In this document: positions 30,105-51,760 of the stretch, one piece after another | How positions within the stretch are numbered: the first letter of the stretch is position 1 | Layout of the letters: each line of letters starts with the position of its first letter | Assembly: GCF_006345805.1 (NCBI RefSeq) | Contig: NC_043025.1 | Span: 12,214,001-12,278,000, forward strand | Length of the DNA: 64,000 bases | Reading direction: 5' to 3' | Source: Octopus sinensis | Taxonomy: Eukaryota | Notes under the pieces: model-generated | The model's database searches: none | What the model was told of the DNA's origin: nothing | The model's input: only the letters and a program-made list of their open reading frames with translations | Made by a program: the position numbers and the translations under genes

Positions 30105-33100
30105 GGTGCTTTTTATGTGCCACCGGCACGAGGGCCTGTTTGGTGGCACTGGCAACGGCCACACCCAAATGGTGCTTTTTACGTGCCACCGGCACAAGGG
30201 CCAGTTTGGTGGTACTGGCAACGGCCACGCCCAAATGGTGCTTTTTACGTGCCACCGGCAAGAGGGCCAGTTTGGTGGTACTGGCAACGGCCACGCCCAA
30301 ATGGTGCTTTTAACGTGCCACCGGCACAAGAGGGCCAGTTTGGTGGTACTGGCAACGGCCACGCCCAAATGGTGCTTTTTACGTGCCACCGGCAAGAGGG
30401 CCAGTTGGTGGTACTGGCAACACCCACGCCCAAATGGTGCTTTTAACGTGCCACCGGCACAAGGGCCAGTTTGGTGGTACTGGCAACGGCCACGCCCAAA
30501 TGGTGCTTTTAACGTGCCACCGGCACAAGGGCCAGTTTGGTGGTACTGGCAACACCACGCCCAAATGGTGCTTTTAACGTGCCACCGGCAAGAGGGCCAG
30601 TTGGTGGTACTGGCAACGGCCACGCCCAAATGGTGCTTTTAACGTGCCACCGCACAAGGGCCAGTTTGGTGGTACTGGCAACACCCACGCCCAAATGGTG
30701 CTTTTAACGTGCCACCGCAAGAGGGCCAGTTTGGTGGTACTGGCAACACCCACGCCCAAATGGTGCTTTTAACGTGCCACCGGCACAAGGGCCAGTTTGG
30801 TGGTACTGGCAACGGCCACGCCCAAATGGTGCTTTTAACGTGCCACCGGCACAAGGGCCAGTTTGGTGGTACTGGCAACACCCACGCCCAAATGGTGCTT
30901 TTAACGTGCCACCGGCAAGAGGGCCAGTTTGGTGGTACTGGCAACGGCCACGCCCAAATGGTGCTTTTAACGTGCCACCGGCACAAGGGCCAGTTTGGTG
31001 GTACTGGCAACACCCACGCCCAAATGGTGCTTTTAACGTGCCACCGGCAAGAGGGCCAGTTTGGTGGTACTGGCAACGGCCACGCCCAAATGGTGCTTTT
31101 AACGTGCCACCGGCACAAGGGCCAGTTTGGTGGTACTGGCAACAGCCACGCCCAAATGGTGCTTTTAACGTGCCACCGGCAAGAGGGCCAGTTTGGTGGT
31201 ACTGGCAACACCCACGCCCAAATGGTGCTTTTAACGTGCCACCGGCACAAGGGCCAGTTTGGTGGTACTGGCAACGGCCACGCCCAAATGGTGCTTTTAA
31301 CGTGCCACCGGCACAAGGGCCAGTTTGGTGGTACTGGCAACGGCCACGCCCAAATGGTGCTTTTAATGTACCACCGGCACAAGGGCCAGTTTGGTGGTAC
31401 TGGCAACACCCACGCCCAAATGGTGCTTTTAACGTGCCACCGGCACAAGGGCCAGTTTGGTGGTACTGGCAACGGCCACACCCAAATGGTGCTTTTAACG
31501 TGCCACCGGCACAAGGGCCAGTTTGGTGGTACTGGCAACAACACCCACGCCACATGGTGCTTTTTACGTGCCACCCGCACAAGGGCCAGTTTGGTGGTAC
31601 TGGCAACGGCCACCCAAATGGTGCTTTTAACGTGCCACCGGCACAAGGGCAGTTTGGTGGTACTGGCAACACACCCACGCCCAAATGGTGCTTTTAACGT
31701 GCCACCGGCACAAGGGCCAGTTTGGTGGTACTGGCAACGGCCACCGCCCAATGGTGCTTTTAAACGTGCCACCGGCAAGAGGGCCAGTTTGGTGGTACTG
31801 GCAACACCCACGCCCAAATGGTGCTTTTAACGTGCCCCGGCAAGAGTGCCAGTTTTGGTGGTACTGGCAACGGCCACACCCAAATGGTGCTTTTAACGTG
31901 CCACCGGCACAAGGGCCAGTTTGTGGTACTGGCAACGGCCACACCCAAATGGTGCTTTTAACGTGCCACCGGCAAGAGGGCCAGTTTGGTGGTACTGGCA
32001 ACACCCACGCCCAAATGGTGCTTTTAACGTGCCACCTGTGCCAGGGCCAGTTTGGTGGTACTGCAACGGCCACGCCCAAATGGTGCTTTTAACGTGCCAC
32101 CTGCACAAGGGCCAGTTTGGTGGTACTGGCAACACCCCACGCCCAAATGGTGCTTTTAAACGTGCCAACCGGCAAGAGGGCCAGTTTGGTGGTACTGGCA
32201 ACACCCACGCCCAAATGGTGCTTTTAACGTCTGCCACCGGCACAAGGGCCAGTTTGGTGGTACTGGCCACAACGGCCACCCAAATGGTGCTTTTAACGTG
32301 CCACCTGCACAGGGCCAGTTTGGTGGTACTGGCAACACCCACGCCCAATGGTGCTTTAAAATAACGTGCCCCGGCAAGAGGGCCAGTTTGGTGGTACTGG
32401 CAACACCCCACGCCCAAATGGTGCTTTTAACGTGCCACCGGCAAGAGGGCCAGTTTGGTGGTACTGGCAACACCCACGCCCAAATGTGTGCTTTTTTACG
32501 TGCCACCGGCAAGAGGGCCAGTTTGGTGGTACTGGCAACACCCCACGCCCAAATGGTGCTTTTTACGTGCCACCGGCAAGAGGGCCAGTTTGGTGGTGTG
32601 GCAACTGGCAACACCCACGCCCCAACATGGTTGCTTTTTGACGTGCCACGCAAAAGGCTAGGAGGCCATTGGGGGTGGGTGGGCCGTGGTGGACCAACGG
32701 CCACCCCAATGGTGCTTTTTACGTGCCACCTGCACAAGGCCAGTTTGGTGGTACTGGCAACGGCCACACCCAAATGGTGCTTTTAACGTGCCACCTGCAC
32801 AGGGCCAGTTTGGTGTACTGGCACGGCCACACCCAAATGGTGCTTTTAACGTGCCACCTGCACAAGGGGCAGTTTGGTGGTACTGGTCAACGCCACACCC
32901 AACACCCCAATGGGCTTTTAACGTGCCACCGGCACAAGGGCCATTTGGTTGTTCTTACTGGCACGGCCACACCCAAATGGATGTGCTTTTAAATTGCACG
33001 TGCCACCTGCACAGGAGCCAGTTTGGTGGTACTGGCAACGGCCACAACCCAAATGGTGCTTTTAACGTGCCACCGGCAAGAGGCCAGTTTGGTGGTACTG

Positions 33101-36100
33101 GCAACGGCCACGCCCAAATGGTGCTTTTAACGTGCCACCGCGCAAGAGGGCCAGTTTGGTGGTACTGGCAACACCCACGCCCAAATGTGCTTTTTTTACG
33201 TGCCACCACCGCAAGAGGGCCAGTTTGTGGTACTGGCAACACCCACGCCCAAATGGTGCTTTTTACGTGCCACCGGCAAGAGGGCCAGTTTGGTGGTACT
33301 GGCAACGGCCACGCCCAAATGGTGCTTTTAACGTGCCACCTGCACAAGGGCCAGTTTGGTGGTACTGGCAACGGCCACACCCAAATGGTGCTTTTAACGT
33401 GCCACCGGCACAAGGGCCAGTTTGGTGGTACTGGCAACGGCCACGCCCAAATGGTGCTTTTAACGTGCCACCGGCAAGAGGGCCAGTTTGGTGGTACTGG
33501 CAACGGCCACGCCCAAATGGTGCTTTTAACGTGCCACCGGCAAGAGGGCCAGTTTGGTGGTACTGGCAACGGCCACGCCCAAATGGTGCTTTTAACGTGC
33601 CACCTGCACAAGGGCCAGTTTGGTGGTACTGGCAACGGCCACGCCCAAATGGTGCTTTTACGTGCCACCGGCAAGAGGGCCAGTTTGGTGGTACTGGCAA
33701 CACCCACGCCCAAATCGTGCTTTTAACGTGCCACCGGCAAGAGGGCCAGTTTGGTGGTACTGGCAACACCCACGCCCAAATGGTGCTTTTAACGTGCCAC
33801 CGGCAAGAGGGCCAGTTTGGTGGTACTGGCAACGGCCACGCCCAAATGGTGCTTTTAACTGCCACCGGCAAGAGGGCCAGTTGGTGGTACTGGCAACGGC
33901 CACGCCCAAATGGTGCTTTTTACGTGCCACCGGCAAGAGGGCCAGTTTGGTGGTACTGGCAACGGCCACGCCCAAATGGTGCTTTTAACGTGCCACCGGC
34001 ACAAGGGCCAGTTTGGTGGTACTGGCACGGCCACGCCCAAATGGTGCTTTTTACGTGCACCGGCAAGAGGGCCAGTTTGGTGGTACTGGCAACGGCCACG
34101 CCCAAATGGTGCTTTTAACGTGCCACCGGCACAAGGGCCAGTTTGGTGGTACTGGCAACGGCCACGCCCAAATGGTGCTTTTTACGTGCCACCGGCAAGA
34201 GGGCCAGTTTGGTGGTACTGGCAACGGCCACGCCCAAATGGTGCTTTTAACGTGCCACCGGCAAGAGGGCCAGTTTGGTGGTACTGGCAACGGCCACGCC
34301 CAAATGGTGCTTTTAACGTGCCACCGGCACAAGGGCCAGTTTGGTGGTACTGGCAACGGCCACGCCCAAATGGTGCTTTTAACGTGCCACCGGCAAGAGG
34401 GCCAGTTTGGTGGTACTGGCAACACCCACGCCCAAATGGTGCTTTTAACGTGCCACCGGCACAAGGGCCAGTTTGGTGGTACTGGCAACGGCCACACCCA
34501 AATGGTGCTTTTAACGTGCCACCTGCACAAGGGCCAGTTTGGTGGTACTGGCAACACCCACGCCCAAATGGTGCTTTTAACGTGCCACCGGCAAGAGGGC
34601 CAGTTTGGTGGTACTGGCAACACCCACGCCCAAATGGTGCTTTTAACGTGCCACGGCAAGAGGGCCAGTTTGGTGGTACTGGCAACACCCACGCCCAAAT
34701 GGTGCTTTTACGTGTGCCACCGGCAGAGGGCCAGTTTGGTGGTACTGGCAACACCCACGCCCAAATGGTGCTTTTTACGTGCCCCACCGCAAGAGGGCCA
34801 GTTTGGTGGTACTGGCAACACCCACGCCCAAATGGTGCTTTTTACGTGCCACCGGCAAGAGGGCCAGTTTGGTGGTACTGGCAACGGCCACGCCCAAATG
34901 GTGCTTTTTACGTGCCACCTGCACAAGGGCCAGTTTGGTGGTACTGGCAACGGCCACACCCAAATGGTGCTTTTAACGTGCCACCTGCACAAGGGCCAGT
35001 TTGGTGGTACTGGCAACGGCCACACCCAAATGGTGCTTTTAACGTGCCACCTGCACAAGGGCCAGTTTGGTGGTACTGGCAACGGCCACACCCAAATGGT
35101 GCTTTTAACGTGCCACCGGCACAAGGGCCAGTTTGGTGGTACTGGCAACGGCCACACCCAAATGGTGCTTTTAACGTGCCACCTGCACAGGAGCCAGTTT
35201 GGTGGTACTGGCAACGGCCACACCCAAATGGTGCTTTTAACGTGCCACCGGCAAGAGGGCCAGTTTGGTGGTACTGGCAACGGCCACGCCCAAATGGTGC
35301 TTTTAACGTGCCACCGGCAAGAGGGCCAGTTTGGTGGTACTGGCAACACCCACGCCCAAATGGTGCTTTTTACGTGCCACCGGCAAGAGGGCCAGTTTGG
35401 TGGTACTGGCAACACCCACGCCCAAATGGTGCTTTTTACGTGCCACCGGCAAGAGGGCCAGTTGGTGGTACTGGCAACGGCCACGCCCAAATGGTCTTTT
35501 AACGTGCCACCTGCACAAGGGCCAGTTTGGTGGTACTGGCAACGGCCACACCCAAATGGTGCTTTTAACGTGCCACCGGCACAAGGGCCAGTTGGTGGTA
35601 CTGGCAACGGCCACGCCCAAATGGTGCTTTTAACGTGCCACGGCAAGAGGGCCAGTTTGGTGGTACTGGCAACGGCCACGCCCAAATGGTGCTTTTAACG
35701 TGCCACCGGCAAGAGGGCCAGTTTGGTGGTACTGGCAACGGCCACGCCCAAATGGTGCTTTTAACGTGCCACCTGCACAAGGGCCAGTTTGGTGGTACTG
35801 GCAACGGCCACGCCCAAATGGTGCTTTTTACGTGCCACCGGCAAGAGGGCCAGTTTGGTGGTACTCTGGCAACACCCACGCCCAAATCGTGCTTTTAACG
35901 TGCCACCGGCAAGAGGGCCAGTTTGGTGGTACTGGCAACACCCCACGCCCAAATGGTGCTTTTAACGTGCCACCGGCAAGAGGCCAGTTTGTGTGGTACT
36001 GGCAACGGCCACGCCCAAATGGTGCTTTTAACGTGCCACCGGCAAGAGGGCCAGTTTGGTGGTACTGGCAACGGCCACGCCACGCCCAAATGGTGCTTTT

Positions 36101-39100
36101 ACGTGCCACCGGCAAGAGGGCCAGTTTGGTGGTACTGGCAACGGCCACGCCCAAATGGTGCTTTTAACGTGCCACCGGCACAAGGGCCAGTTTGGTGGTA
36201 CTGGCAACGGCCACGCCCAAATGGTGCTTTTTACGTGCCACCGGCAAGAGGGCCAGTTTGGTGGTACTGGCAACGGCCACGCCCAAATGGTGCTTTTAAC
36301 GTGCCACCGGCACAAGGGCCAGTTTGGTGGTACTGGCAACGGCCACGCCCAAATGGTGCTTTTTACGTGCCACCGGCAAGAGGGCCAGTTTGGTGGTACT
36401 GGCAACGGCCACGCCCAAATGGTGCTTTTAACGTGCCACCGGCAAGAGGGCCAGTTTGGTGGTACTGGCAACGGCCACGCCCAAATGGTGCTTTTAACGT
36501 GCCACCGGCACAAGGGCCAGTTTGGTGGTACTGGCAACGGCCACGCCCAAATGGTGCTTTTTACGTGCCACCGGCAAGAGGGCCAGTTTGGTGGTACTGG
36601 CAACGGCCACGCCCAAATGGTGCTTTTAACGTGCCACCGGCACAAGGGCCAGTTTGGTGGTACTGGCAACGGCCACGCCCAAATGGTGCTTTTTACGTGC
36701 CACCGGCAAGAGGGCCAGTTTGGTGGTACTGGCAACACCCACGCCAAATGGTGCTTTTTACGTGCCACCGGCAAGAGGGCCAGTTTGGTGGTACTGGCAA
36801 CACCCACGCCCAAATGGTGCTTTTAACGTGCCACCGGCAAGAGGGCCAGTTTGGTGGTACTGGCAACGGCCACGCCCAAATGGTGCTTTTAACGTGCCAC
36901 CGGCAAGAGGGCCAGTTTGGTGGTACTGGCAACACCCACGCCCAAATGGTGCTTTTAACGTGCCACCGGCAAGAGGGCCAGTTTGGTGGTACTGGCAACA
37001 CCCACGCCCAAATGGTGCTTTTAACGTGCCACCGGCAAGAGGGCCAGTTTGGTGGTACTGGCAACAACCCGCCCAAATGGTGCTTTTAACGTGCCACCGG
37101 CAAGAGGGCCAGTTTGGTGGTACTGGCAACGGCCACGCCCAAATGGTGCTTTTAACGTGCCACCGGCAAGAGGGCGTTTGGTGGTACTGGCAACACCCAC
37201 GCCCAAATGGTGCTTTTAACGTGCCACCGGCACAAGGGCCAGTTTGGTGGTACTGGCAACGGCCACACCCAAATGGTGCTTTTAACGTGCCACCTGCACA
37301 AGGGCCAGTTTGGTGGTACTGGCAACACCCACGCCCAAATGGTGCTTTTAACGTGCCACCGGCAAGAGGGCCAGTTTGGTGGTACTGGCAACACCCACGC
37401 CCAAATGGTGCTTTTAACGTGCCACCGGCAAGAGGGCCAGTTTGGTGGTACTGGCAACACCCACGCCCAAATGGTGCTTTTTACGTGCCACCGGCAAGAG
37501 GGCCAGTTTGGTGGTACTGGCAACACCCACGCCCAAATGGTGCTTTTTACGTGCCACCGGCAAGAGGGCCAGTTTGGTGGTACTGGCAACACCCACGCCC
37601 AAATGGTGCTTTTTACGTGCCACCGGCAAGAGGGCCAGTTTGGTGGTACTGGCAACGGCCACGCCCAAATGGTGCTTTTTACGTGCCACCTGCACAAGGG
37701 CCAGTTTGGTGGTACTGGCAACGGCCACACCCAAATGGTGCTTTTAACGTGCCACCTGCACAAGGGCCAGTTTGGTGGTACTGGCAACGGCCACACCCAA
37801 TGGTGCTTTTAACGTGCCACCTGCACAAGGGCCAGTTTGGTGGTACTGGCAACGGCCACACCCAAATGGTGCTTTTAACGTGCCACCGGCACAAGGGCCA
37901 GTTTGGTGGTACTGGCAACGGCCACACCCAAATGGTGCTTTTAACGTGCCACCTGCACAGGAGCCAGTTTGGTGTACTGGCAACGGCCACACCCAAATGG
38001 TGCTTTTAACGTGCCACCGGCAAGAGGGCCAGTTTGGTGGTACTGGCAACGGCCACGCCCAAATGGTGCTTTTAACGTGCCACCGGCAAGAGGGCCAGTT
38101 TGGTGGTACTGGCAACACCCACGCCCAAATGGTGCTTTTTACGTGCCACCGGCAAGAGGGCCAGTTTGGTGGTACTGGCAACACCCACGCCCAAATGGTG
38201 CTTTTTACGTGCCACCGGCAAGAGGGCCAGTTTGGTGGTACTGGCAACGGCCACGCCCAAATGGTGCTTTTAACGTGCCACCTGCACAAGGGCCAGTTTG
38301 GTGGTACTGGCAACGGCCACACCCAAATGGTGCTTTTAACGTGCCACCGGCACAAGGGCCAGTTTGGTGGTACTGGCAACGGCCACGCCCAAATGGTGCT
38401 TTTAACGTGCCACCGGCAAGAGGGCCAGTTTGGTGGTACTGGCAACGGCCACGCCCAAATGGTGCTTTTAACGTGCCACCGGCAAGAGGGCCAGTTTGGT
38501 GGTACTGGCAACGGCCACGCCCAAATGGTGCTTTTAACGTGCCACCTGCACAAGGGCCAGTTTGGTGGTACTGGCAACGGCCACGCCCAAATGGTGCTTT
38601 TTACGTGCCACCGGCAAGAGGGCCAGTTTGGTGGTACTGGCAACACCCACGCCCAAATCGTGCTTTTAACGTGCCACCGGCAAGAGGGCCAGTTTGGTGG
38701 TACTGGCAACACACCCACGCCCAAATGGTGCTTTTAACGTGCCACCGGCAAGAGGGCCAGTTTGGTGGTACTGGCAACGGCCACGCCCAAATGGTGCTTT
38801 TAACGTGCCACCGGCAAGAGGCCAGTTTGGTGGTACTGGCAACGGCCACGCCCAAATGGTGCTTTTTACGTGCCACCGCAAGAGGGCCAGTTTGGTGGTA
38901 CTGGCAACGGCCACGCCCAAATGGTGCTTTTAACGTGCCACCGGCACAAGGGCCAGTTTGGTGGTACTGGCAACGGCCACGCCAAATGGTGCTTTTTACG
39001 TGCCACCGCAAGAGGGCCAGTTTGGTGGTACTGGCAACGGCCACGCCCAAATGGTGCTTTTAACGTGCCACCGGCACAAGGGCCAGTTTGGTGGTACTGG

Positions 39101-40870
39101 CAACGGCCACGCCCAAATGGTGCTTTTTACGTGCCACCGGCAAGAGGGCCAGTTTGGTGGTACTGGCAACGGCCACGCCCAAATGGTGCTTTTAACGTGC
39201 CACCGGCAAGAGGGCCAGTTTGGTGGTACTGGCAACGGCCACGCCCAAATGGTGCTTTTAACGTGCCACCGGCACAAGGGCCAGTTTGGTGGTACTGGCA
39301 ACGGCCACGCCCAAATGGTGCTTTTTACGTGCCACCGGCAAGAGGGCCAGTTTGGTGGTACTGGCAACGGCCACGCCCAAATGGTGCTTTTAACGTGCCA
39401 CCGGCACAAGGGCCAGTTTGGTGGTACTGGCAACGGCCACGCCCAAATGGTGCTTTTTACGTGCCACCGGCAAGAGGGCCAGTTTGGTGGTACTGGCAAC
39501 ACCCACGCCCAAATGGTGCTTTTTACGTGCCACCGGCAAGAGGGCCAGTTTGGTGGTACTGGCAACACCCACGCCCAAATGGTGCTTTTAACGTGCCACC
39601 GGCAAGAGGGCCAGTTTGGTGGTACTGGCAACGGCCACGCCCAAATGGTGCTTTTAACGTGCCACCGGCAAGAGGGCCAGTTTGGTGGTACTGGCAACAC
39701 CCACGCCCAAATGGTGCTTTTAACGTGCCACCGGCAAGAGGGCCAGTTTGGTGGTACTGGCAACACCCACGCCCAAATGGTGCTTTTAACGTGCCACCGG
39801 CAAGAGGGCCAGTTTGGTGGTACTGGCAACACCCACGCCCAAATGGTGCTTTTAACGTGCCACCGGCAAGAGGGCCAGTTTGGTGGTACTGGCAACGGCC
39901 ACGCCCAAATGGCTTTTAACGTGCCACCGGCAAGAGGCCAGTTAGGTGGTACTGGCAACACCCACGCCCAAATGGTGCTTTTAACGTGCCACCGGCAAGA
40001 GGGCCAGTTTGGTGGTACTGGCAACACCCACGCCCAAATGGTGCTTTTAACGTGCCACCGGCAAGAGGGCCAGTTAGGTGGTACTGGCAACACCCACGCC
40101 CAAATGGTGCTTTTAACGTGCCACCGGCAAGAGGGCCAGTTTGGTGGTACTGGCAACGGCCACGCCCAAATGGTGCTTTTAACGTGCCACCGGCAAGAGG
40201 GCCAGTTTGGTGGTACTGGCAACACCCACGCCCAAATGGTGCTTTTAACGTGCCACCGCAAGAGGGCCAGTTTGGTGGTACTGGCAACACCCACGCCCAA
40301 ATGGTGCTTTTAACGTGCCACCGGCAAGGGGCCAGTTTGGTGGTACTGGCAACGGCCACGCCCAAATGGTGCTTTTAACGTGCCACCGGCACAAGGGCCA
40401 GTTTGGTGGTACTGGCAACACCCACGCCCAAATGGTGCTTTTAACGTGCCACCGGCACAAGGGTCAGTTTGGTGGTACTGGCAACACCCACGCCCAAATG
40501 GTGCTTTTAACGTGCCACCGGCAAGAGGGCCAGTTTGGTGGTACTGGCAACGGCCACGCCCAAATGGTGCTTTTAACGTGCCACCGGCACAAGGCCAGTT
40601 TGGTGGTACTGGCAACACCCACGCCCAAATGGTGCTTTTAACGTGCCACCGGCAAGAGGGCCAGTTTGGTGGTACTGGCAACGGCCACGCCCAAATGGTG
40701 CTTTTAACGTGCCACCGGCAAGAGGGCCAGTTTGGTGGTACTGGCAACGGCCACGCCCAAATGGTGCTTTTAACGTGCCACCGGCACAAGGGCCAGTTTG
40801 GTGGTACTGGCAACGGCCACGCCCAAATGGTGCTTTTAACGTGCCACCGGCACAGGAGCCAGTCCAGCGG
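30105..40870. repeat. ~10.8-kb GC-rich satellite of ~66-bp monomers (~160 copies)
   Basis: Monomer GGTGCTTTTAACGTGCCACCGGCACAAGGGCCAGTTTGGTGGTACTGGCAACGGCCACGCCCAAAT; the 22-aa periodicity in the ORF track reflects the 66-nt unit. Confidence 0.97.
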
Positions 40871-41254
40871 CACTGGCGACGACCTCGCTCGAATATTTCA
40901 CATGCCACCAGCACAAGTGCTAGTATGGCGACGCAGGTAACGATAACACTTGAATGGTGTGCTTAACGTGCCATCGGCACGAAGGCCAGCTTGTTGCTCT
41001 GGCAACGATCTCACTCGTATGGTACTCTTAGCGCTCCACTAGTAACGGATGCCAGTCACCGAATTTGATTTTGACTTTGTGATTAAAATCATAATTGACC
41101 GATCCTCAGGTATTTTCTTTTACCCAAGCCAAAAACTTTCCAAGCCCCCCCCCCGCCCTGTACATGTGTGTGGGTGAGATCAAGGGTGGTGGTGGTGATG
41201 ACAAGGTGATATACCAACGGGGCAAAAAGAAGAGCAGAAAAAGAAGCGGTTTAA

Positions 41255-41421: not shown

Positions 41422-44400
41422 CTGAAACGATAAATACACAGGTTTATATCAGTCTGTAACAGGTAAGATTGATTCATTATCATCATCATCATCATCATCA
41501 TCATCATCGTTTAACGTCCGTTTTCCGCGCTAGCACGGGTTGGACGGTTCGACCGGGGTCTGGGGAGCCAGGGGCTGCCCCAGGCTCCGGTCTGATCTGG
41601 CAGTGTTTCTACGGCTGGATGCCCTTCCTAACGCCAACCACTCCGTGAGTGTAGTGGCGGCTTTTTACGTGCCACCTGCACAGGTGCCAGAGGGGTCTGG
41701 CATCGGTCACGTTCAGATGGTGCTTTTTATGTGCCACCGGCACAGAAGCCATTCGAGGCAGGGTTGGCATCGGTCACGTTCGGATGGTGCTTTTTTATGT
41801 GCCACCGGCACAGAAGCCATTCGAGGCAGGGTTGGCATCAGTCACGTTCGGATGGTGCTTTTTATGTGCCACCGGCACAGAAGCCATTCGAGGCAGGGTT
41901 GGCATCGGTCACGTTCGGATGGTGCTTTTTTATGTGCCACCGGCACAGAAGCCATTCGAGGCAGGGTTGGCATCGGTCACGTTCGGATGGTGCTTTTTAT
42001 GTGCCACCGGCACAGAAGCCATTCGAGGCAGGGTTGGCATCGGTCACGTTCGGATGGTGCTTTTTATGTGCCACCGGCACAGAAGCCAGTGGAGGCTGCA
42101 CTGGCAACGGCCACGTTCGGATGGTGCTTTTTATGTGTCACCGGCACAGGTATCACAACTACTGTTTCCATTGATATTTGGTTAGTAAATAATATTATGA
42201 AATGTCGGAGTCAGCAGTTGTAACGATACGGGTTATGATAAATCCAAAAGTATGCCAAGTAAAGTTTGTGTTTGCGACCTCTTCATTGTTTAGTAGTAAC
42301 TAGCAGTATCGCTCGGCGTTGCTCGGGTTTGTAAGGGAAATAACTATATAAGCATTTTTAGAGAGTTATAGCCAAAAAATAGCAAAAAATGCATTAAAAA
42401 TGGAGAGAAAATGCTGGTAAATTTACGTTCCTAACACTAGTTTAATGATAACTAAGTTATTTTACTAAATTATGACTAAGGTTTGGTGGAATATTTTAAT
42501 TCAAAACTTATGAAAACAAGACATTTTACCACAGAGCCAGAGCTGGTTTTGGCCGGGTTAGTAACAAAAGGGTTAAGCCATACCAAATAAACGAAACACG
42601 TAGATCGCGTTCTAAAGAGGAATTTGACTCTTGTAGAACACGCTGGCAATGTAGATTGCATACAAAAGTAGCGCCATGTATTCTTACCACGTCCAGATTT
42701 TTTGGTTATCCTTAGTCGACACTCAGGACAACTTCTAAGCGGAACTTTTGAACAACATGTCTCACAGATCAAAGTATGGCCGCAGGGATGGAATTCTACT
42801 ATGGGATGGTTAATTTCACAAAACATACACAGCAATCTATGGAAGAAAAAGCAAAAGAAAAACACAGCCCATCAATAACAGTTATCGTCCATTTATAACA
42901 AATATTACATTGAGTATATTGTTGTATTTAGGAATGGTCATTTTGCCATTTTAGCCAATAAGAAACACATGCACGATATATTTGGTGTTACTTTGCTTCA
43001 GTGTTATTTATTTTTACATTAATCTTAATCTTATTTCGGCCAGAGTTCTTTCGTCACACTCCTGTAACCTCATCAGTGGTCCTTTGCTTTTTTCTTTCTT
43101 ATTTCTGTGTCTCTCCTTACTAACAGTCAGCCATTATTATTAATATCAGGAAGTCAATATTAGAAAATTCTTCAGAAAGATATATACGTGTGTAGAAAAA
43201 CCTGGGTTTTTAGTAATATATATTTTATAATATATTATTATTGTTGTTGTATTTAGGAATGGTCATTTTGCTAGTTTAGCCAATAAAAACACATGCAACT
43301 ATATATTTGGTGTTATTTTGCTTCAGTGTTACTTATTTTTTGCATTAATCTTAATCTTATTTCAGCCAGAGTTCTTTCGTCACACTCCTGTGACCTCATC
43401 AGTGGTCCTTTGCTTTCTTCTTTCTTATTTGTGTCTCTCCTTACTAACAGTCAGCGCAAATGAAGACGTACAATAGAAATACAAAATGGCTGACGGTTAG
43501 TAAGGAGAGACACACAAATAAGAAAGAAGAAAACAAAGGACCACTGATGCGGTCACACGCCTGTGACGAAAGAACTCTAGGCGAAATAAGATTAAGATTA
43601 ATGTAAAAAATAAATAACACTGAAGCAAAATAACACCAAATATATAGTGCGTGTGTTTTTTATTGGCTAAACTGGCAAAATGACCATTCCGAAATATAAC
43701 AATATCTGTTTCAACACACGACTTCACATAAAAAAATCTTGCACAACAAATATATAAACGTACATTGAGTATACATTTACAGAAAATGAAATACTAAAGT
43801 ATCTGAAATGTAATGGAAAATTGGTCAGTTTGAAAACATTGATGTCCGGGTGATAAAAGCAAAGTGTGAAGGGAATGGTAGTCACTTCCTTTGATTTCTA
43901 GACAGAATCCAATAAGAAATGACACTCACTGACCAAAGACAACAAGCAAATCTCTGGTATTGGACAGAATATTTGTTATAATGATATTTCTGCTTCAGCA
44001 ACTCTGTGCTGAATCTGTGTGAAATGTAATGGAAAATTGGTCAGTTTTGAAACATTGTCTGGGTGATAAAAGCAAAGTTTGAAGGGAATACTGGTCATTC
44101 CTTTCATTTCTAAGTAGAAGCAAATAGGAGATAACACTTGCTGACCAAAGACAACAAGCAAATCTGTGGTATTGGACAGAATATTTGCTATAACAATATT
44201 TCTACGTCAGCAACTCAGAGCTGGATTTGTTTGAAACGTAATGGAAAATAGGTCAGTTTCAAAGCATTGATGTCCGGGTGATAAAAGCAATGTTAAAAGC
44301 AATCCACCCTTAGGGGTTAGCCACACTTAAGTGGCAAATATACTTCACGATGTCATGCTGCTACTGTTTATACTTCGCTCAGAGATTTATTATTGCTTGT

Positions 44401-47400
44401 TTACACTTCTTTGATATCAGTGATTTTTCATCACTGGAAAAAGGATATATATTTGTAGAGGAAGGCCTACTTTTCATCGACAACCAGTGATTGTCACACG
44501 CTGATGACGGGTCAATACCAAGAAACTCGAGTCCATGTGTATCATAGGTTGAAGACAGGATGGCTTCCCTTTGCAAATACTGATAGGGCACAGAAAGTGT
44601 GTCAATAGCCAGCTGGAGGAGGTGTCCTCCTGGGGCTACAAGCTACAGTAGCATCCACCCTTAGGGGTTAGCCACGTTTAAGTGGCAAATATACTTCACG
44701 ATGTCATGCTGCTACTGTTTATACTTCGCTCAGAGATTTATTATTGCTTGTTAACACTTTTGATATCAGTGATTTTTCATCACTGGAAAAAGGATATATA
44801 TTTGTAGAGGAAGGCCTACTTTTCATCGACAACCAGTGATTGTCACACGCTGATGACGGGTCAATACCAAGAAACTCGAGTCCATGTGTATCATAGGTTG
44901 AAGACAGGATGGCTTCCCTTTGCAAATACTGATAGGGCACAGAAAGTGTGTCAATAGCCAGCTGGAGGAGGTGTCCTCCTGGGGCTACAAGCTACAGTAG
45001 CATCCACCCTTAGGGGTTAGCCACGTTTAAGTGGCAAATATACTTCACGATGTCGTGCAGCTACTGTTTATACCTCGCTCAGAGATTTATTATTGCTTGT
45101 TAACACTTTCGATATCAGTGATTTTTCATCACTGGAAAAAGGATATATATTTGTAGAGGAAGGCCTACTTTTCATCGACAACCAGTGATTGTCACACGCT
45201 GATGACGAGTCAATACCCAGAAACTCGAGTCCATGTGTATCATAGGCTGAAGACGGGAAGGATGGCTTCCCTTTGTAAATACTGATAGGGCACAGAAAGT
45301 GTGTCAATAGCCAGCTGGAGGAGGTGTCCTCCTGGGGCTACAAGCTACAGTAGCATCCACTCTTAGGGGTTAGCCACGTTTAAGTGGCAAATATACTTCA
45401 GATAATATAAACATGATTATGTACAAAATAGAAAATGAACTGGTTGATCTTGTCCATTATCAGCAAATACTTACGGCGGGGTGAAAATTGTTTTTATTTT
45501 TTCTCTCAGATCTGGGTTCGTAATACGGTCCAGTGGGACTTCGTTCTTGGTATTTTGGTGGTAAAAGTTAGCTCCATGATGAGCTAAATAATACGCGACT
45601 GCTATTCCGGAAAGCCTGTCATTCTCGTTCAAAGACAGTTTAGTGCAGCCCTACAAATGAAGAAACATATAAAGAGGAGAACAATACTACAGAAACAGGC
45701 GTTAGGCGTTATATATGCCCCAAATTACACAAAAGTTAAACTACATCTACACAGCGCAGGAGTGGCTGTGTGGTAAGTAGCTTGTTTACCAACCACATGG
45801 TTCCGGGTTCAGTCCCACTGCGTGGCACCTTGGGCAAGTGTCTTCTGCTATAGCCCTGGGCCGACCAATGCCTTGTGAGTGGATTTGGTAGACGGAAACT
45901 GAAAGAAGCCTGTCGTATATATGTATATATATATATATGTGTGTGTGTGTTTGTGTGTCTGTGTTTGTCCCACTAGCATTGCTTGACAACCGATGCTGGT
46001 GTGTTTACGTCCCCGTCACTTAGCGGTTCGGCAAAAGAGACCGATAGAATAAGTACTAGGCTTACAAAGAATAAGTCCCGGAGTCGATTTGCTCGACTAA
46101 AAGGCGGTGCTCCAGCATGGCCGCAGTCAAATGACTGAAACAAGTAAAAGAGTAAAGAGTATAGGCACAGGCGTGGCTGTGTGGTAAGAAACTTGCTTCC
46201 CAACCACATGGTTCCAGGTTCAGTCTCACTGTGTGGCACCTTGGGCAAGTGTCTTCTACTGTAACCTCGGGCCAACCAAAACTTTCTGAGTGAATTTGGT
46301 AGAAGGAAACTGAAAGAAGCTTGTCATATGTATGTGTATGCATGTACTTGTGTGTGTGTGTGTGTATATCACTTATTTTAGTGCTGTTGACACTGCTGGA
46401 TTGAGTGGTACTGCCCACCAGGAGTTGAAACCATAATGATATCCATGGGGCAGCTGATGATGGACGTATGTTGGATTGTTGGTATGGCTGGTTTTGTATA
46501 TGTGGAATAGTATTTTAACACATCCTTTTGGTATATATATATATATATAGAAATCAAAATCAAAATCGATCAACATCAATGGAAATTGCAGCTGTGATAC
46601 CAGTGTCGGTGGTAAGTAAGAGAACTATCCGAATGTGGTCGTTGCCAGCACCACCCCGACTGGCCTTGTGCTGGTGGCACGTAAAAAGCACCATCTGATC
46701 GTGGCCGTTGCCAGCCTCATCTGGCCCCCGTGCCGGTGGCACGTAAAAAAAGCACCATCCGATCGTGGCCGTTTGCCAGCCTCGTCTGGCACCTGTGCCG
46801 GTGGCACGTAAAAAGCACCCACTACACTCACGGAGTGGTTGGCGTTAAGAAGGGCATCCAGCCGTAGAAACATTGCCAGATCAGACTGGGCCTGGTGCAG
46901 CCTTCTGGCTTCCCAGACCCCAGTTGAACCGTTCAACCCATGCTAGCATGGAAAGCGGACGCTAAACGAAGATGATGATGATGATGATATATATATAACT
47001 ATAAGACATGACTGTCTCTCTGTCCATCTCTCCCTCATATTCACAAGCAATTTTAAAACTTACCTCATCTAAAATTTCCAAGGACTCATCCGCAGAACGG
47101 AACATCTCCTTCTCCAGGGCAAGATGCAGGCAGTTGTTATCATCAGCATCAACGGTGTTTATATCTGCTTCATGGTCAATCAACATATGAATGATTCCGA
47201 GGTGGCCCTCGGAGACAGCCAAAAGAAACGGGGTTCTCTGGTTGTGGTTCTTGACATCCAAATTCACTCGATCCTTTGTGGAGACAAAAAAGGGAAAACG
47301 ATAATTTACATAAAAATTAGGGTGGATATTTGCCACTACACTCTTCTACTGGGTATTTGATTAACTTGATCACATGCGTTTAAGGTTTGTCGGTGAAGTC

Positions 47401-48831: not shown

Positions 48832-48877
<46 letters not shown>

Positions 48878-49038
48878 GGAGTGGCTGTGTGGTAAGTAGT
48901 TTGCTTACCAACCACATGGTTCTAGGTTCAGTCCCACTGTGTGGCACCTTGGTTAAGTGTCTTCTACTATAGCCTCGGGCCGACCAAAGCCTTGTGAGTA
49001 GATTTGGTAGACGGAAACTGAAAGAAGCCCGTCGTATA

Positions 49039-49069
<31 letters not shown>

Positions 49070-51760
49070 GCAGGAGTGGCTGTGTGGTAAGTAGTTTGCT
49101 TACCAACCACATGGTTCTAGGTTCAGTCCCACTGTGTGGCACCTTGGTTAAGTGTCTTCTACTATAGCCTCGGGCCGACCAAAGCCTTGTGAGTGGATTT
49201 GGTAGACGGAAACTGAAAGAAGCCCGTCGTATATGTGTGTATATATATATATATATATGCAGGAGTGGCTGTGTGGTAAGTAGCTTGCTTACCAACCACA
49301 TGGATCTGGGTTCAGTCCTACTGTGTGGAACTTTGGGCAAGTGTCTTCTACTATAGCCTCAGGCTGACCAAAGCCTTGTGAGTGGATTTGGTAGATGGAA
49401 ACTGAAAGAAGCCCGTCGTATATATGTATGTGTGTGTGTGTGTATGTCCCCACCACTCATCACCACCACCATTTGGTAATTGGTAGATAAGTAGTGCTGT
49501 CACCATAGTAACTAAGTTTTGATTTAAAACGATAAGGATTTTAAGTGCAAGTCTGTCAACACAACACAAACTTCATAAACAAAGTCAGTTGTTTTTGGTT
49601 TATTTGTGTGTGTGTTTCTGTGTCTTTCAACTTGTAAGCAACACAGACTTTACAACAAAGACTTTCATTGTGAACAATTTACGAAGGTATACTCTTTTAC
49701 TCTTTTACTTGTTTCAGTCATTTGACTGCAGCCATGCTGGAGCACCGCCTTTAATCGAGCAACTCGACCCCGGGACTTATTCTTTTGTAAGCCCAGTACT
49801 TATTCTATCAGTCTCTTTTGCCGAACCGCTAAGTAATGGGGACACAAACACACCAGCATCGGTTGTCAAGCAATGCTAGGGGGACAAACACAGACACACA
49901 CACATATATATATACATATATATGACAGGCTTCTTTCAGTTTCCATCTACCAAATCCACTCACAAGGCATTGGTCGGCCCGAGACTATAGCAGAAGACAC
50001 TTGCCCAAGGTGCCACGCAGTGGGACTGACCCCGGAACCATGTGGTTGGTAAGCAAGCTACTTACCACACAGCCACTCTTGCGCCTGTATGTGCATGATT
50101 AACAATTATTTTTATTGGCAACGTAGCAACGAGCAGTGACCTAGTAATTAAATAAAAGCAAACACTATGAAAAATATAATAGAAAGGAATTTGGATATTC
50201 CAGATCATTGTTGACCTACCCTCGGACTGCATCATGGAGAGGTGTTCCGCCATTTACATTGTTCACTACATTCACATCAGCTCCAGCTCCTAGGAGACAG
50301 TAAACGATATCCGTCTGTCCTCCGTAACAGGCCAAATGTAGAGGTGTGTGACCATTAGTATCTCTCTTATTGACATCAGCTCTAGCGTCCACTAACAGTT
50401 TAACAATATCTGCGTATACACCACCACAGGACAGGTGTAGAGGTGTGTTGCCAAGATTATCACCGGTGTTGACATCAGCCCTGGATGTCAATAACAGACG
50501 AACAATATCTGTATATCCACCGTCACAGGCCAGATGTAGAGGTGTGCAACCATGTTCGTTTCGTTGATTGACCTGGAGAAAAAAATAAAGGTTCTAGTAG
50601 AGAGGTGGGTACATCATCATCATTTAACGTCCGTCGTCCATACCGGCATGGGTTGGATAGTTTGACTGGGCTGGCACGTTATTTCTGTATTGAATCAATT
50701 TCAGAATCAATCCCATGGATTTTTTCCTCTTCAGTAGAAAATACGATAAGAAATAAATGAAATATTTACATGCACCCATGGAAAAAAAAAACGAAGCAAA
50801 AGTCATGAGTACATATAAGTACCCCAGATATATCTAAATATAAGATCCATACATACACACACACACACATATATATATATAAACATATGCACATATGTTC
50901 ATACACATTTATACACACATATATGTATCCACTGGATGCGAGACCTGGACACTAAAGAAAGCTGACCAGAAGAGAATTAATGCATTCGAGCTTTGGTGTT
51001 GGAGAAGACTTTTACGGATTCCATGGACAGCGAGGCTCACCAATGGAGAAGTTCTTAAGCAGATCAGGCCGAAAATGTTGCTAGAAGCTAGGATCACCAA
51101 GCATAGATTGGCATATTTTGGTCATATTATTTGGAGAAAATCCCTGGAGAAGGACATCATGCTTGGAATGGTCAGTGGCAAGAGAGGAAGAGACCGACCA
51201 AGAACCTGCTGGCTTGACACCATCAAGATTGATACCGGAATGGACACAGCCAATCTGAAAGAAACGGCCCAGGATTGAACTGACTGGAGGACACTGATCC
51301 AACGAGTGACTGAGAGTCGACTTCGACTGAGCGGATAGATAGATAGATATATATATGTGTGTATATATATATGTGTATATATATATGGACACTAAAGAAA
51401 GCTGACCAGAAGAGAATTAATGCATTTGAGCTTTGGTGTTGGAGAAGACTTTTACAGATTCCATGAAAAGCGAGGCTCACCAATGGAGAAGTTCTTAACC
51501 AGATCGAGCCGAAACTGTCGCTGGAAGCTGGGATCACCAAGCATAGATTGGCATATTTTGGCCATATTATGCGGAGAAAATCCCTGGAGAAGGACATCAT
51601 GCTCGGAATGGTCAGTGGCAAGAGAGGAAGAGGCCGACCAAGAACCTGCTGGCTTGACACCATCAAGAGTGATACCGGAATGGATATAGCCAATCTGAAA
51701 GAAGCGGCCCAGGATAGAACTGACTGGAGGACACTGATCCATCGAGTAACCGACTGAGCG

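What the first reader, a model, noticed from the sequence alone, without database searches (positions are those of the whole stretch)
44302..45400. Retrozyme-like array: 349-nt tandem units, each with a type I hammerhead ribozyme
Seen: three units each contain CAACC-AG-TGAT-TGT-CACACG-[CTGATGA]-CGGGT-CAAT-ACC(A/C)A-[GAAAC]-TCGA-[GTC]-CATGTG-T-ATCA-TA-GG(T/C)TG, at exactly 349-nt spacing (cores at 44501, 44850, 45199). This gives the full catalytic core, a GUC cleavage triplet, a 1-bp stem III inside the palindrome ACTCGAGT, and a ~15-bp stem I with an internal loop positioned to contact loop II. No ORF of note is present. Known: non-LTR retrozymes are non-coding tandem repeats of roughly 170-400 nt with one type I hammerhead per unit. 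They are processed to monomeric linear and circular RNAs in several metazoans, and palindromic stem III allows double-hammerhead dimers. Inference: + strand transcription, antisense to the ankyrin-RING intron, would release 349-nt monomers (cuts after 44533, 44882, 45231) that could circularise. This would be a cephalopod retrozyme family that I do not recognise as described.
Basis: partly seen in the sequence, partly recalled or inferred. Interest (0 to 1): 0.92.

Follow-up and report, generated by a model that had tools for sequence, protein, structure and literature searches.

The report
Retrozyme-like repeat with weak hammerhead motif
A 349-base non-coding unit repeated three times inside an intron carries a complete but sub-standard hammerhead self-cleaving RNA motif, so it is most likely a worn copy of a known kind of small mobile element (a retrozyme), not something new.

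Summary
Tandem Repeats Finder gives 44302-45400, period 349, 3.1 copies, 97% identity. CTGATGA sits at 44501, 44850 and 45199, followed by GAAA, the palindrome ACTCGAGT and GTC. The layout matches canonical metazoan type I hammerheads in tandem repeats. The unit is 43% GC, non-coding and unusually well folded (z -2.9); the neighbouring repeats are not.

The ribozyme is sub-canonical. Helix II has only three pairs, with C.A and G.A mismatches next to the core. Helix I has an A.C mismatch. Copy 3 is worse. No Rfam hammerhead model matches even at E<=10. A covariance model built from validated mussel and axolotl retrozyme hammerheads scores left-out coral ones at 36-41 bits and this motif at 15-16 bits. 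Those are the top hits in the window but not significant. The catalytic fold is about 10 kcal/mol above an alternative fold.

No other copy could be retrieved, so family consensus, covariation and expression are untested.

About 1 kb away on the opposite strand lies a 325-nt tandem-plus-inverted repeat with a Penelope-type minimal hammerhead. This supports a retrozyme/Penelope context.

Verdict: probably a retrozyme-type insertion with a weakened ribozyme, a new member of a known kind, of modest interest.

The parts
44302..45400 (+). Tandem array of a 349-nt non-coding unit: 3.1 copies, 97% identical, last unit 353 nt because of a 4-nt insertion.
   Evidence: Tandem Repeats Finder, unit alignment and blastn of the unit against the window, which finds only this array.
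44481..44551 (+). Hammerhead-like motif 1. Helix I is CAACC/GGTTG + TGAT/ATCA + CACACG/CATGTG. Core is CTGATGA. Helix II is GGT-CAAT-ACC with C.A and G.A mismatches at its base. Then GAAA and helix III A-C-[TCGA]-G-T. The predicted cut is after C at 44533.
   Evidence: Sequence, relaxed descriptor hit, covariance model R1 11.0 bits and R2 15.0 bits.
44830..44900 (+). Hammerhead-like motif 2, identical to motif 1. The predicted cut is after 44882.
45179..45249 (+). Hammerhead-like motif 3. The core is intact. Helix II is further damaged (CGAGT/ACCCA) and distal helix I has an A.C mismatch. The predicted cut is after 45231.
   Evidence: It fails even the relaxed descriptor. The hammerhead-compatible fold is 16.1 kcal/mol above the minimum free energy fold. 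R1 scores 13.4 bits and R2 16.0 bits.
43804..44294 (.). An unrelated 212-nt tandem array (2.3 copies, 84% identical) that abuts the left edge of the 349-nt array. It has no hammerhead-like motif and is not unusually structured.
   Evidence: Tandem Repeats Finder, repeats, fold z-score -0.18, no covariance-model hit.
42891..43705 (-). A ~325-nt repeat element: two direct copies (~42891-43135 and ~43216-43455) plus an inverted copy (43485-43705). This is the tandem-plus-inverted layout described for Penelope-like element insertions.
   Evidence: the repeat finder families D3-D7 and inverted pairs I1-I5. The layout is described in the Fig. 2 legend of PMC8557442.
43363..43408 (-). Penelope-type minimal hammerhead-like motif: GGACCA-CUGAUGA-G-GUCACA-GGAG-UGUGAC-GAAA-GAAC-UC|UGGC. 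It has an unpaired G between positions 9 and 10.1, a G10.1-C11.1 pair, a 6-bp helix II and a 3-bp helix I.
   Evidence: R1 hit of 11.6 bits. A post hoc descriptor gives 0 hits in 500 shuffles. The features match the text of PMC4209133.
43037..43082 (-). Second copy of the minimal hammerhead-like motif. Helix II is kept through a C-to-U change that gives a G.U pair.
43538..43583 (+). Third, inverted copy of the minimal motif. It is decayed: the core reads CTGATGC (A9 to C), loop II is CGCC, and helix I is broken.
45475..45650 (-). Inferred exon of the host gene (GCTKLS...TIFTPP) ending at a GTAAGT donor at 45474-45469. The array ends 74 nt downstream of the first intron base (45474).
   Evidence: Translation and sequence, splice signals read by eye. 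Pfam gives no match.
42476..42836 (-). Inferred next exon, after the acceptor ...ttcttccatAG. It encodes a C3HC4 RING finger. The intron 45474-42837 is 2638 nt, and about 91% of it is made of the three repeat blocks.
   Evidence: Pfam zf-C3HC4_3 scores 26.6 bits against a cut-off of 27.

Best explanation
The 349-nt array is a retrozyme-type (non-LTR, hammerhead-bearing, non-coding) tandem insertion. It lies in an intron, antisense to the host gene, next to a Penelope-type minimal-hammerhead repeat. The copies here carry a weakened and possibly inactive type I hammerhead.

Mechanism of the family (inferred, not shown):
1. Transcription of the + strand gives a multimer.
2. Hammerheads of adjacent units pair through the palindrome ACUCGAGU to make an 8-bp helix III (a double hammerhead).
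3. The RNA is cut 3' of GUC, after 44533, 44882 and 45231.
4. The 349-nt monomers, whose ends are held together by helix I, are ligated into circles by a host RNA ligase.
5. The circles are copied back into DNA by a Penelope-like reverse transcriptase.

What is shown here is only the sequence anatomy: the complete core, the canonical helix architecture, the tandem arrangement, the composition, the lack of coding capacity and the strong self-pairing of the unit. Because of the helix II and helix I mismatches and a much more stable competing fold, I expect these three copies to cleave poorly or not at all.
For: - Array geometry.
- All invariant core positions (CUGAUGA, GAAA, A15.1-U16.1, C17) are present in all three copies.
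- The architecture matches the published description of canonical metazoan type I hammerheads: helix I 6 bp, helix II about 4 bp, helix III 1-2 bp with a small palindromic loop (PMC4209133).
- It also matches four experimentally cleaving retrozyme hammerheads, whose helix III palindromes are ACAGTACTGT, ACGCGCGT, ACACGTGT and ACATGT (PMC7229834 Supplementary Table 2).
- One of those four (Ax353) also has a mismatch at the base of helix II and passes only my relaxed descriptor.
- The relaxed descriptor gives 0.03 hits expected per shuffled window.
- The three motifs are the top hits of model R2 in the window (15-16 bits, next best 10 bits) and among the top four of R1.
- The unit is 43% GC, has no ORF above 79 aa, and has no protein relatives.
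- The monomer cut at the proposed site folds with its ends paired through helix I, at -105.7 kcal/mol, z -2.92, with 0 of 100 shuffles as good. The neighbouring 212-nt and 325-nt units give z -0.18 and +0.60.
- The + strand folds better than the - strand (-105.7 against -93.6 kcal/mol).
- A second, independent hammerhead-like motif of Penelope type lies about 1.1 kb away, in a tandem-plus-inverted repeat.
Against: - No Rfam hammerhead model matches at gathering score or at E<=10. A validated coral retrozyme hammerhead is seen at 29.5 and 20.9 bits at E<=10.
- Model R2 gives left-out coral hammerheads 36-41 bits but this motif only 15-16 bits, E 0.18-0.33.
- Helix II has two mismatches at its base, including position 10.1/11.1. 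Helix I has an A.C mismatch at 1.2/2.2.
- The core stems sum to +0.9 kcal/mol, against -3.9 to -12.2 in the validated controls.
- The hammerhead-compatible fold is 9.8 or 16.1 kcal/mol above the minimum free energy fold, in which CGGGU pairs with ACUCG.
- Differences between copies are not depleted in the motif: 3 of about 9 changes in copy 3 fall in the 75-nt motif, and none is compensatory.
- There is only one array in 64 kb, and no other copy was found anywhere.
- No target-site duplication was found.
- Retrozymes are reported to be depleted from introns in Xenopus (bioRxiv 10.64898/2026.07.22.740005).
Confidence: 0.55

Rival explanations
1. This is a fully active retrozyme. The unusual helix II (C.A and G.A next to the core) would be tolerated, for example as non-canonical pairs stacked on the core G.A pairs and helped by loop-loop contacts. 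The array would then be processed into abundant 349-nt linear and circular RNAs.
For: The anatomy is the same as in the best explanation. Copies 1 and 2 are identical and pass the relaxed descriptor. A validated axolotl hammerhead also has a mismatch at the base of helix II, and mussel hammerheads lack the classical loop contacts yet still yield abundant circles. Validated hammerheads also lie 3-7 kcal/mol above their minimum free energy fold.
Against: There are two adjacent mismatches, including the normally conserved 10.1-11.1 pair. Only 3 helix II pairs remain. Covariance-model scores are far below those of a left-out validated family. The energy gap to the competing fold is the largest of all sequences compared. 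Copy 3 is clearly degenerating.
Confidence: 0.2
2. This is a chance hammerhead-like string in an ordinary intronic minisatellite. The window is full of tandem repeats, and across a genome-wide scan some relaxed hammerhead descriptors will be met by accident.
For: - The strict descriptor fails.
- Covariance-model E-values are 0.18-0.9.
- Rfam is silent.
- The extended helix I reaches only p = 0.075.
- The three copies are one event by descent.
- No second locus is known.
- At 0.03 relaxed hits per 64-kb window, a multi-gigabase genome would give hundreds of chance hits before further filters.
Against: Several independent features coincide:
- A complete core.
- A 6-bp helix I followed by an internal loop and a closing stem.
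- A palindromic helix III.
- A location in a tandem repeat of the typical unit size.
- A unit much more structured than its shuffles and its neighbours.
- A second hammerhead-like motif of a different, Penelope-associated type within about 1.1 kb.
Confidence: 0.15
3. This is a fragment of a Penelope-like element: tandemised pseudo-LTR sequence, possibly one composite insertion together with the 325-nt and 212-nt blocks. On this view it is not an independent retrozyme family.
For: The three repeat blocks fill about 91% of one 2.6-kb intron and abut each other. The 325-nt block has the tandem-plus-inverted layout and the minimal hammerhead typical of Penelope-like elements. A 2026 preprint argues that retrozymes derive from Penelope pseudo-LTRs.
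Against: The 349-nt motif has the canonical architecture (helix I 6 bp plus loop, short helix II, no unpaired nucleotide after A9), not the minimal Penelope architecture. The 349-nt unit shares no sequence with the other blocks. No reverse transcriptase or GIY-YIG ORF appeared among the 10 longest non-repeat ORFs tested; this test was not exhaustive.
Confidence: 0.1

Closest known systems
Non-LTR retrozymes of metazoans (Cervera & de la Pena 2020, PMC7229834), for example the Mytilus galloprovincialis 350-390-bp repeats, Acropora 220-240-bp repeats and axolotl 330/350-bp repeats
   Same: - A tandem, non-coding unit within the 170-400 nt range, nearly the size of the mussel unit.
- Low GC (43%).
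- One type I hammerhead-like motif per unit, with a complete core.
- Helix I of 6 bp followed by an internal loop.
- Helix III of 2 bp with a palindromic tetraloop, allowing a double hammerhead.
- A strongly self-paired monomer.
- A hammerhead-bearing, Penelope-type repeat nearby.
   Different: - There is no sequence similarity outside the core, which is expected because families are species-specific.
- Helix II has two mismatches at its base and only 3 pairs.
- There is an A.C mismatch at 1.2/2.2, and the 1.1-2.1 pair is C-G, whereas the four validated examples have U-A.
- Covariance-model scores are far lower than for validated members.
- Copy number, dispersal and circular RNA are unknown.
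- The location is intronic.
Newt/salamander satellite 2 and Schistosoma Sm-alpha type I hammerheads (architecture recalled from my own knowledge and from PMC4209133)
   Same: A short helix III with a palindromic loop that requires dimers for efficient cleavage, an asymmetric internal loop in helix I with more residues on the 5' strand, and an A-rich loop II (here CAAU, or UCAAUA if the U-A pair is open).
   Different: Those have a 4-bp helix II beginning with G10.1-C11.1 and are experimentally active. This resemblance is a lead from memory, not a test.
Minimal hammerheads in pseudo-LTRs of Penelope-like elements (Cervera & de la Pena 2014, PMC4209133). This applies to the neighbouring 325-nt element, not to the 349-nt array.
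   Same: An unpaired nucleotide between A9 and 10.1, a G10.1-C11.1 pair, a long helix II (6 bp), a very short helix I (3 bp), and a tandem plus inverted copy arrangement.
   Different: The helix III region AGAACU is not palindromic. No reverse transcriptase/GIY-YIG ORF is attached. The unit is only ~325 nt.

Membership tests
Hammerhead ribozyme, canonical metazoan type I | Invariant core: C3-U4-G5-A6-N7-G8-A9, G12-A13-A14, A15.1-U16.1, and H17 (not G) at the cleavage site | tested here: met
   CTGATGA ... GAAA ... T-C is present in all three copies at the right positions.
Hammerhead ribozyme, canonical metazoan type I | Helix II of about 4 bp, closed at the core by a 10.1-11.1 pair (usually G-C) | tested here: not met
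   Copies 1 and 2 have C.A at 10.1/11.1 and G.A at 10.2/11.2, followed by 3 pairs. Copy 3 shows the pattern 0-1-0-1-1.
Hammerhead ribozyme, canonical metazoan type I | Open helix I of about 6 bp followed by loop 1 and a closing stem | tested here: met
   CACACG/CATGTG gives 5 pairs plus an A.C mismatch at 1.2/2.2. Then comes an internal loop (UGU/U), then 4 bp, then 5 bp. The extension energy is -10.3 kcal/mol, p = 0.075.
Hammerhead ribozyme, canonical metazoan type I | Helix III of 1-2 bp capped by a small palindromic loop (competent for dimers) | tested here: met
   A-C-[UCGA]-G-U. ACTCGAGT is an 8-nt palindrome. The criterion comes from PMC4209133.
Hammerhead ribozyme, canonical metazoan type I | Match to curated or validated covariance models | tested here: inconclusive
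   Rfam gives no hammerhead-clan hit at gathering score or at E<=10. Rfam gathering scores also miss validated coral retrozyme hammerheads, although these appear at 29.5 and 20.9 bits at E<=10. My own models give 11-13.4 bits (R1) and 15-16 bits (R2), the top of the window but with E 0.2-0.9, against 36-41 bits for left-out coral hammerheads.
Hammerhead ribozyme, canonical metazoan type I | Loop 1 - loop 2 tertiary contacts | not testable with these tools
   The positions of the loops are right (internal loop after 6 bp, 4-6-nt loop II). The conserved contact nucleotides are given only in figures that are not held.
Hammerhead ribozyme, canonical metazoan type I | Self-cleavage at the predicted site | not testable with these tools
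   This needs in vitro transcription. Thermodynamics is unfavourable: the hammerhead-compatible fold is 9.8-16.1 kcal/mol above the minimum free energy fold, against 3.1-7.4 in four validated controls.
Non-LTR retrozyme (metazoan) | Head-to-tail repeats of about 170-400 bp, with at least two consecutive units each carrying a hammerhead | tested here: met
   Period 349, 3.1 copies, three motifs. Only two of the three motifs pass even the relaxed descriptor.
Non-LTR retrozyme (metazoan) | Low GC (<45-50%), no coding capacity, no LTR/PBS/PPT | tested here: met
   GC is 0.43. The longest ORF is 79 aa and has no relatives.
Non-LTR retrozyme (metazoan) | Monomer RNA highly self-paired | tested here: met
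   z -2.92 with 0 of 100 shuffles as good. The circular fold is -103.1 kcal/mol with 58% of bases paired. Neighbouring repeat units give z -0.18 and +0.60.
Non-LTR retrozyme (metazoan) | A family of many dispersed genomic copies (mobility) | not testable with these tools
   There is a single array in the window. No copy was found in viral or metagenome contigs, nor as predicted proteins of any frame. The source genome is not searchable here.
Non-LTR retrozyme (metazoan) | Target-site duplication (optional: 'when present') | tested here: not met
   The array flanks share only 5-mers.
Non-LTR retrozyme (metazoan) | Expression as monomeric linear and circular RNA | not testable with these tools
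   No transcriptome data are available.
Penelope-like element minimal hammerhead (neighbouring 325-nt element) | Unpaired nucleotide between 9 and 10.1, a G10.1-C11.1 pair, helix II of 6-8 bp, and a short helix I | tested here: met
   CUGAUGA-G-GUCACA-GGAG-UGUGAC-GAAA with a 3-bp helix I, in two copies. A post hoc descriptor gives 0 hits in 500 shuffles. The criteria come from PMC4209133.
Penelope-like element minimal hammerhead (neighbouring 325-nt element) | Palindromic 15.2-16.2 / loop 3 | tested here: not met
   AGAACU is not a palindrome.
Penelope-like element minimal hammerhead (neighbouring 325-nt element) | Location in pseudo-LTRs flanking a reverse transcriptase/GIY-YIG ORF | tested here: inconclusive
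   The tandem-plus-inverted copy layout is present. No reverse transcriptase or endonuclease domain was found in the 10 ORFs scanned, but the window was not scanned exhaustively.

The most novel reading that the evidence does not exclude
Its hammerhead would work despite a non-canonical helix II base (C.A plus G.A stacked on the core), acting as a double hammerhead to yield 349-nt circular RNAs. The family would be mobilised together with the neighbouring Penelope-type element. That element's minimal hammerheads lie in the sense strand of the host intron and could cut the host pre-mRNA.
Probability: 0.15. Interest if true: 0.5.

Novelty: new member of a known kind. Interest (0 to 1): 0.3.

Why it matters
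If real, this adds one more animal lineage to the already wide distribution of hammerhead-bearing tandem retroelements. No paper in the held library describes a retrozyme from a cephalopod. It would also offer a natural test of how much damage at the base of helix II a type I hammerhead tolerates. The side-by-side placement of a canonical-type hammerhead repeat and a Penelope-type minimal-hammerhead repeat in one intron bears on the current proposal that animal retrozymes derive from, and depend on, Penelope-like elements. It does not open a new kind of biology.

Tried and rejected
**Attempts to find other copies**
- Exact-pattern scans for the motif, with helix II left free, found nothing in viral contigs or metagenome contigs.
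- A search of the 5.8-billion-protein collection with the 73-aa minus-strand ORF that covers the motif found nothing. The hope was to catch spurious ORF calls on related contigs.
- The same search with a concatenated all-frame translation of the 349-nt array and the 325-nt element also found nothing.
- An exact look-up of the 676-aa zinc-finger ORF, meant to identify the source organism, found no record.
- A full-text search for the motif strings in papers gave 0 hits.

**Other searches**
- Rfam was run at gathering score over the whole window and at E<=10 on the array and on the 325-nt element. One search returned only generic long-hairpin microRNA-model hits caused by the inverted repeat.
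- Searches for a target-site duplication around the array and around the whole composite found only 5-mers, plus one 7-mer consistent with chance.
- The 349-nt unit shows no similarity to the validated coral, mussel or axolotl retrozymes outside the core.

**Technical failures and limits**
- A three-sequence leave-one-out alignment was abandoned because MAFFT placed a gap inside GAAA. A two-sequence model was used instead.
- My first hammerhead dot-bracket string was mis-registered, so its energies should be disregarded.
- Cofolding two motifs gave only strand swapping of helix I, not the double hammerhead. I did not evaluate the energy of the explicit double-hammerhead structure.

Full report
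**1. The observation**

Tandem Repeats Finder reports one array at 44302-45400 with period 349, 3.1 copies, 97% matches and no indels. The sequence shows CTGATGA at 44501, 44850 and 45199. Each is embedded in CAACC-AG-TGAT-TGT-CACACG-CTGATGA-CGGGT-CAAT-ACCAA-GAAA-C-TCGA-G-TC-CATGTG-T-ATCA-TA-GGTTG. Cutting after the C of GTC (44533, 44882, 45231) gives two complete 349-nt monomers that are 343/349 identical. The last, partial unit has a 4-nt insertion. blastn finds the unit nowhere else in the 64-kb window. The longest ORF across the array is 79 aa.

**2. Anatomy against the hammerhead definition**

All invariant positions are present in all three copies: C3-U4-G5-A6-U7-G8-A9, G12-A13-A14, A15.1-U16.1 and C17.

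- *Helix III* is A-U plus C-G, capped by UCGA. ACUCGAGU is an 8-nt palindrome, so two units can pair into a long helix III.
- *Helix I* has a proximal 6-position stem (CACACG/CAUGUG) with an A.C mismatch at 1.2/2.2. It continues through an internal loop (UGU/U), 4 bp, a 2x2 loop and 5 bp.
- This is the layout described for canonical metazoan type I hammerheads: helix I 6 bp, helix II 4 bp, helix III 1-2 bp with a small palindromic loop that is active as a dimer in tandem repeats (PMC4209133).
- *Helix II* is the weak point. CGGGU/ACCAA gives C.A at 10.1/11.1, G.A at 10.2/11.2, and only three pairs (GGU/ACC) around CAAU. Copy 3 (CGAGU/ACCCA) gains one pair and loses another. It also has a new A.C mismatch in distal helix I.

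**3. Is it more than chance?**

- A strict type I descriptor (three helix II pairs starting at the core) finds nothing in the window.
- A relaxed descriptor (three consecutive pairs within the first five positions) finds copies 1 and 2. It gives 0.03 hits per dinucleotide-shuffled window.
- Of four experimentally cleaving retrozyme hammerheads taken from Supplementary Table 2 of PMC7229834, three pass the strict descriptor. One (axolotl Ax353, with a U.U at the base of helix II) passes only the relaxed one.
- The distal part of helix I adds little. Its duplex energy is -10.3 kcal/mol, and 7.5% of equally spaced sequence pairs drawn from this repeat-rich window match or beat it.
- Add the palindromic loop 3 and the location in a tandem repeat of the right unit size. 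By my rough multiplication of the above factors, chance is then remote for this window. It is of order one event for a multi-gigabase genome scan. That estimate is an inference, not a computed value.

**4. Model-based tests with controls**

- Rfam 15 gives no hit at gathering thresholds in the whole window. It gives no hammerhead-clan hit at E<=10 on 44200-45500.
Rfam gathering thresholds miss these too, so that negative is uninformative.
- At E<=10, however, the coral motif is detected by Hammerhead_3 (29.5 bits) and HH9 (20.9 bits). The candidate is not detected.
- Model R1, built from the four validated sequences, scores the candidate at 11.0-13.4 bits, E 0.18-0.89.
- Model R2, built only from mussel and axolotl Ax353, scores the left-out coral hammerheads at 35.9-40.9 bits (E about 1e-7). 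It scores the candidate at 15-16 bits (E 0.18-0.33). These are the three best hits in the window, with the next at 10 bits.
- The motif therefore stands out from its background but is far less canonical than a validated hammerhead from an unrelated phylum.

**5. Thermodynamics**

- In the minimum free energy fold of the 75-nt motif, helix I forms, but CGGGU pairs with ACUCG instead of forming helices II and III.
- The three core stems sum to +0.9 kcal/mol for copies 1 and 2, and +4.4 for copy 3. The four validated controls give -3.9 to -12.2.
- The best hammerhead-compatible fold lies 9.8 kcal/mol (copies 1 and 2) or 16.1 kcal/mol (copy 3) above the minimum free energy fold. The controls lie 3.1-7.4 kcal/mol above theirs.
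- Nearest-neighbour energies ignore tertiary contacts and co-transcriptional folding. This argues for a weak ribozyme, not a dead one.

**6. The rest of the unit**

- The 349-nt monomer, cut at the proposed site, folds to -105.7 kcal/mol with its two ends paired through helix I. The z-score is -2.92, and 0 of 100 shuffles fold as well.
- As a circle it folds to -103.1 kcal/mol with 58% of bases paired.
- The complementary strand folds less well: -93.6 kcal/mol, z -2.29.
- The neighbouring repeat units are not unusually structured. The 212-nt unit has z -0.18 and the 325-nt unit z +0.60.
- GC content is 43%.
- These are the published properties of non-LTR retrozymes: tandem repeats of 170-400 nt, low GC, non-coding, highly self-paired. 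The Mediterranean mussel has units of 350-390 bp (PMC7229834).
- There is no sequence similarity to the coral, mussel or axolotl units. This is expected, because the families are species-specific.

**7. Surroundings**

- On the minus strand, an exon (45650-45475, GCTKLS...TIFTPP) ends at a GTAAGT donor. The next exon starts after ...ttcttccatAG at 42836 and encodes a C3HC4 RING finger (Pfam 26.6 bits, cut-off 27).
- Pfam does not recognise the first exon as ankyrin.
- The intron (45474-42837, 2638 nt; splice sites read by eye) is about 91% repeats. These are the 349-nt array, an abutting 212-nt array (43804-44294), and a ~325-nt element (42891-43705).
- No target-site duplication flanks the array.

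**8. A second hammerhead-like element**

Model R1 also hit the minus strand at 43364-43408 and 43040-43079. The sequence there is GGACCA-CUGAUGA-G-GUCACA-GGAG-UGUGAC-GAAA-GAAC-UC|UGGC.

- It has an unpaired nucleotide between A9 and 10.1, a G10.1-C11.1 pair, a 6-bp helix II and a 3-bp helix I. These are the hallmarks listed for the minimal hammerheads of Penelope-like elements (PMC4209133). The helix III region AGAACU is not palindromic.
- The two copies sit in direct repeats 325 nt apart, followed by an inverted copy (43485-43705). In the inverted copy the core is mutated (CUGAUGC) while helix II is kept.
- A tandem arrangement with an adjacent inverted copy is the typical Penelope insertion layout (PMC8557442).
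- A descriptor written after the fact finds only these two copies, and none in 500 shuffles.
- No reverse transcriptase or endonuclease domain was found in the ten ORFs I scanned. That scan was not exhaustive.
- Two different hammerhead-type motifs in adjacent repeats of one intron make a pure-chance reading of either less likely. They also fit the reported co-existence of retrozymes and Penelope-like elements.

**9. What could not be done**

I could not reach any other copy of the unit. Pattern scans of viral and metagenome contigs found nothing. Protein-space searches with the ORF and with an all-frame translation found nothing. A look-up of a neighbouring gene found no record. Family consensus, copy number, covariation and expression, which are the decisive evidence, therefore remain untested.

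Within the array, 3 of about 9 differences in copy 3 lie in the 75-nt motif, and none is compensatory. Among such young duplicates this says little.

**10. Conclusion**

The most likely reading (about 0.55) is a retrozyme-type, hammerhead-derived tandem insertion whose copies at this locus carry a weakened ribozyme. Rivals:
- A chance motif in an ordinary minisatellite (about 0.15).
- A fragment of a composite Penelope-like insertion (about 0.1).

In the held literature, no retrozyme is described from cephalopods. Such repeats are, however, reported from molluscs and many other phyla. This would be a new member of a known kind, and the interest is modest.

Noticed in passing
window 42891-43705 (motifs at 43363-43408 -, 43037-43082 -, 43538-43583 +): A ~325-nt repeat with two direct copies and one inverted copy. 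Each copy carries a Penelope-type minimal hammerhead-like motif: CUGAUGA-G-(6-bp helix II)-GAAA, with an unpaired G after A9 and a 3-bp helix I. The two intact copies lie on the sense strand of the host intron.
   Followed up: partly
window 43298-43648: Direct copy B and the inverted copy of the 325-nt element form a 142-nt-arm inverted repeat, 92% complementary, with a 67-nt spacer. It draws sub-threshold hits from several long-hairpin microRNA models (for example MIR447, 65 bits against a gathering score of 200). It would form a long hairpin in the host pre-mRNA and could be a source of small RNAs.
   Followed up: no
window 43804-44294: A 212-nt tandem array (2.3 copies, 84% identical) ends exactly where the 349-nt array begins. 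It has no hammerhead-like motif, and its fold is no better than that of shuffles. Its relationship to the two flanking elements is unexplained.
   Followed up: partly
loci L017, L031, L053 (coral-holobiont metagenome contigs): A method note. Rfam 15 at gathering thresholds does not report the experimentally validated Acropora retrozyme hammerheads. At E<=10 they appear only as sub-threshold Hammerhead_3 (29.5 bits, wrong circular permutation) and HH9 (20.9 bits) hits. Rfam-based screens will therefore under-call retrozyme hammerheads.
   Followed up: yes
window 18442-20472 (+): A 676-aa uninterrupted ORF made of about 20 C2H2 zinc fingers (Pfam zf-H2C2_2, E 7.5e-181). The exact product is not on record in the contig collection.
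   Followed up: partly
window ~29860-40940, 41693-42149, 46668-46814: Arrays of 65-67-nt units (GTGCCGGTGGCACG...-type) at 40000-40863, 41693-42149 and 46668-46814. From about 29.9 to 40.9 kb, long ORFs overlap on both strands, which suggests one very long stop-free tandem array. I did not run Tandem Repeats Finder on the stretch before 40000.
   Followed up: no
window 45755-45850 and 48842-49433: A repeated GCAGGAGTGGCTGTGTGGTAAGTAG...GGTTC(C/T)(G/A)GGTTCAGTCCCACTG... sequence that looks like a tRNA-derived SINE, and a 195-nt tandem array of it. This was not tested with ARAGORN.
   Followed up: no
window (position not located): The window contains 100 N bases, presumably one assembly gap.
   Followed up: no
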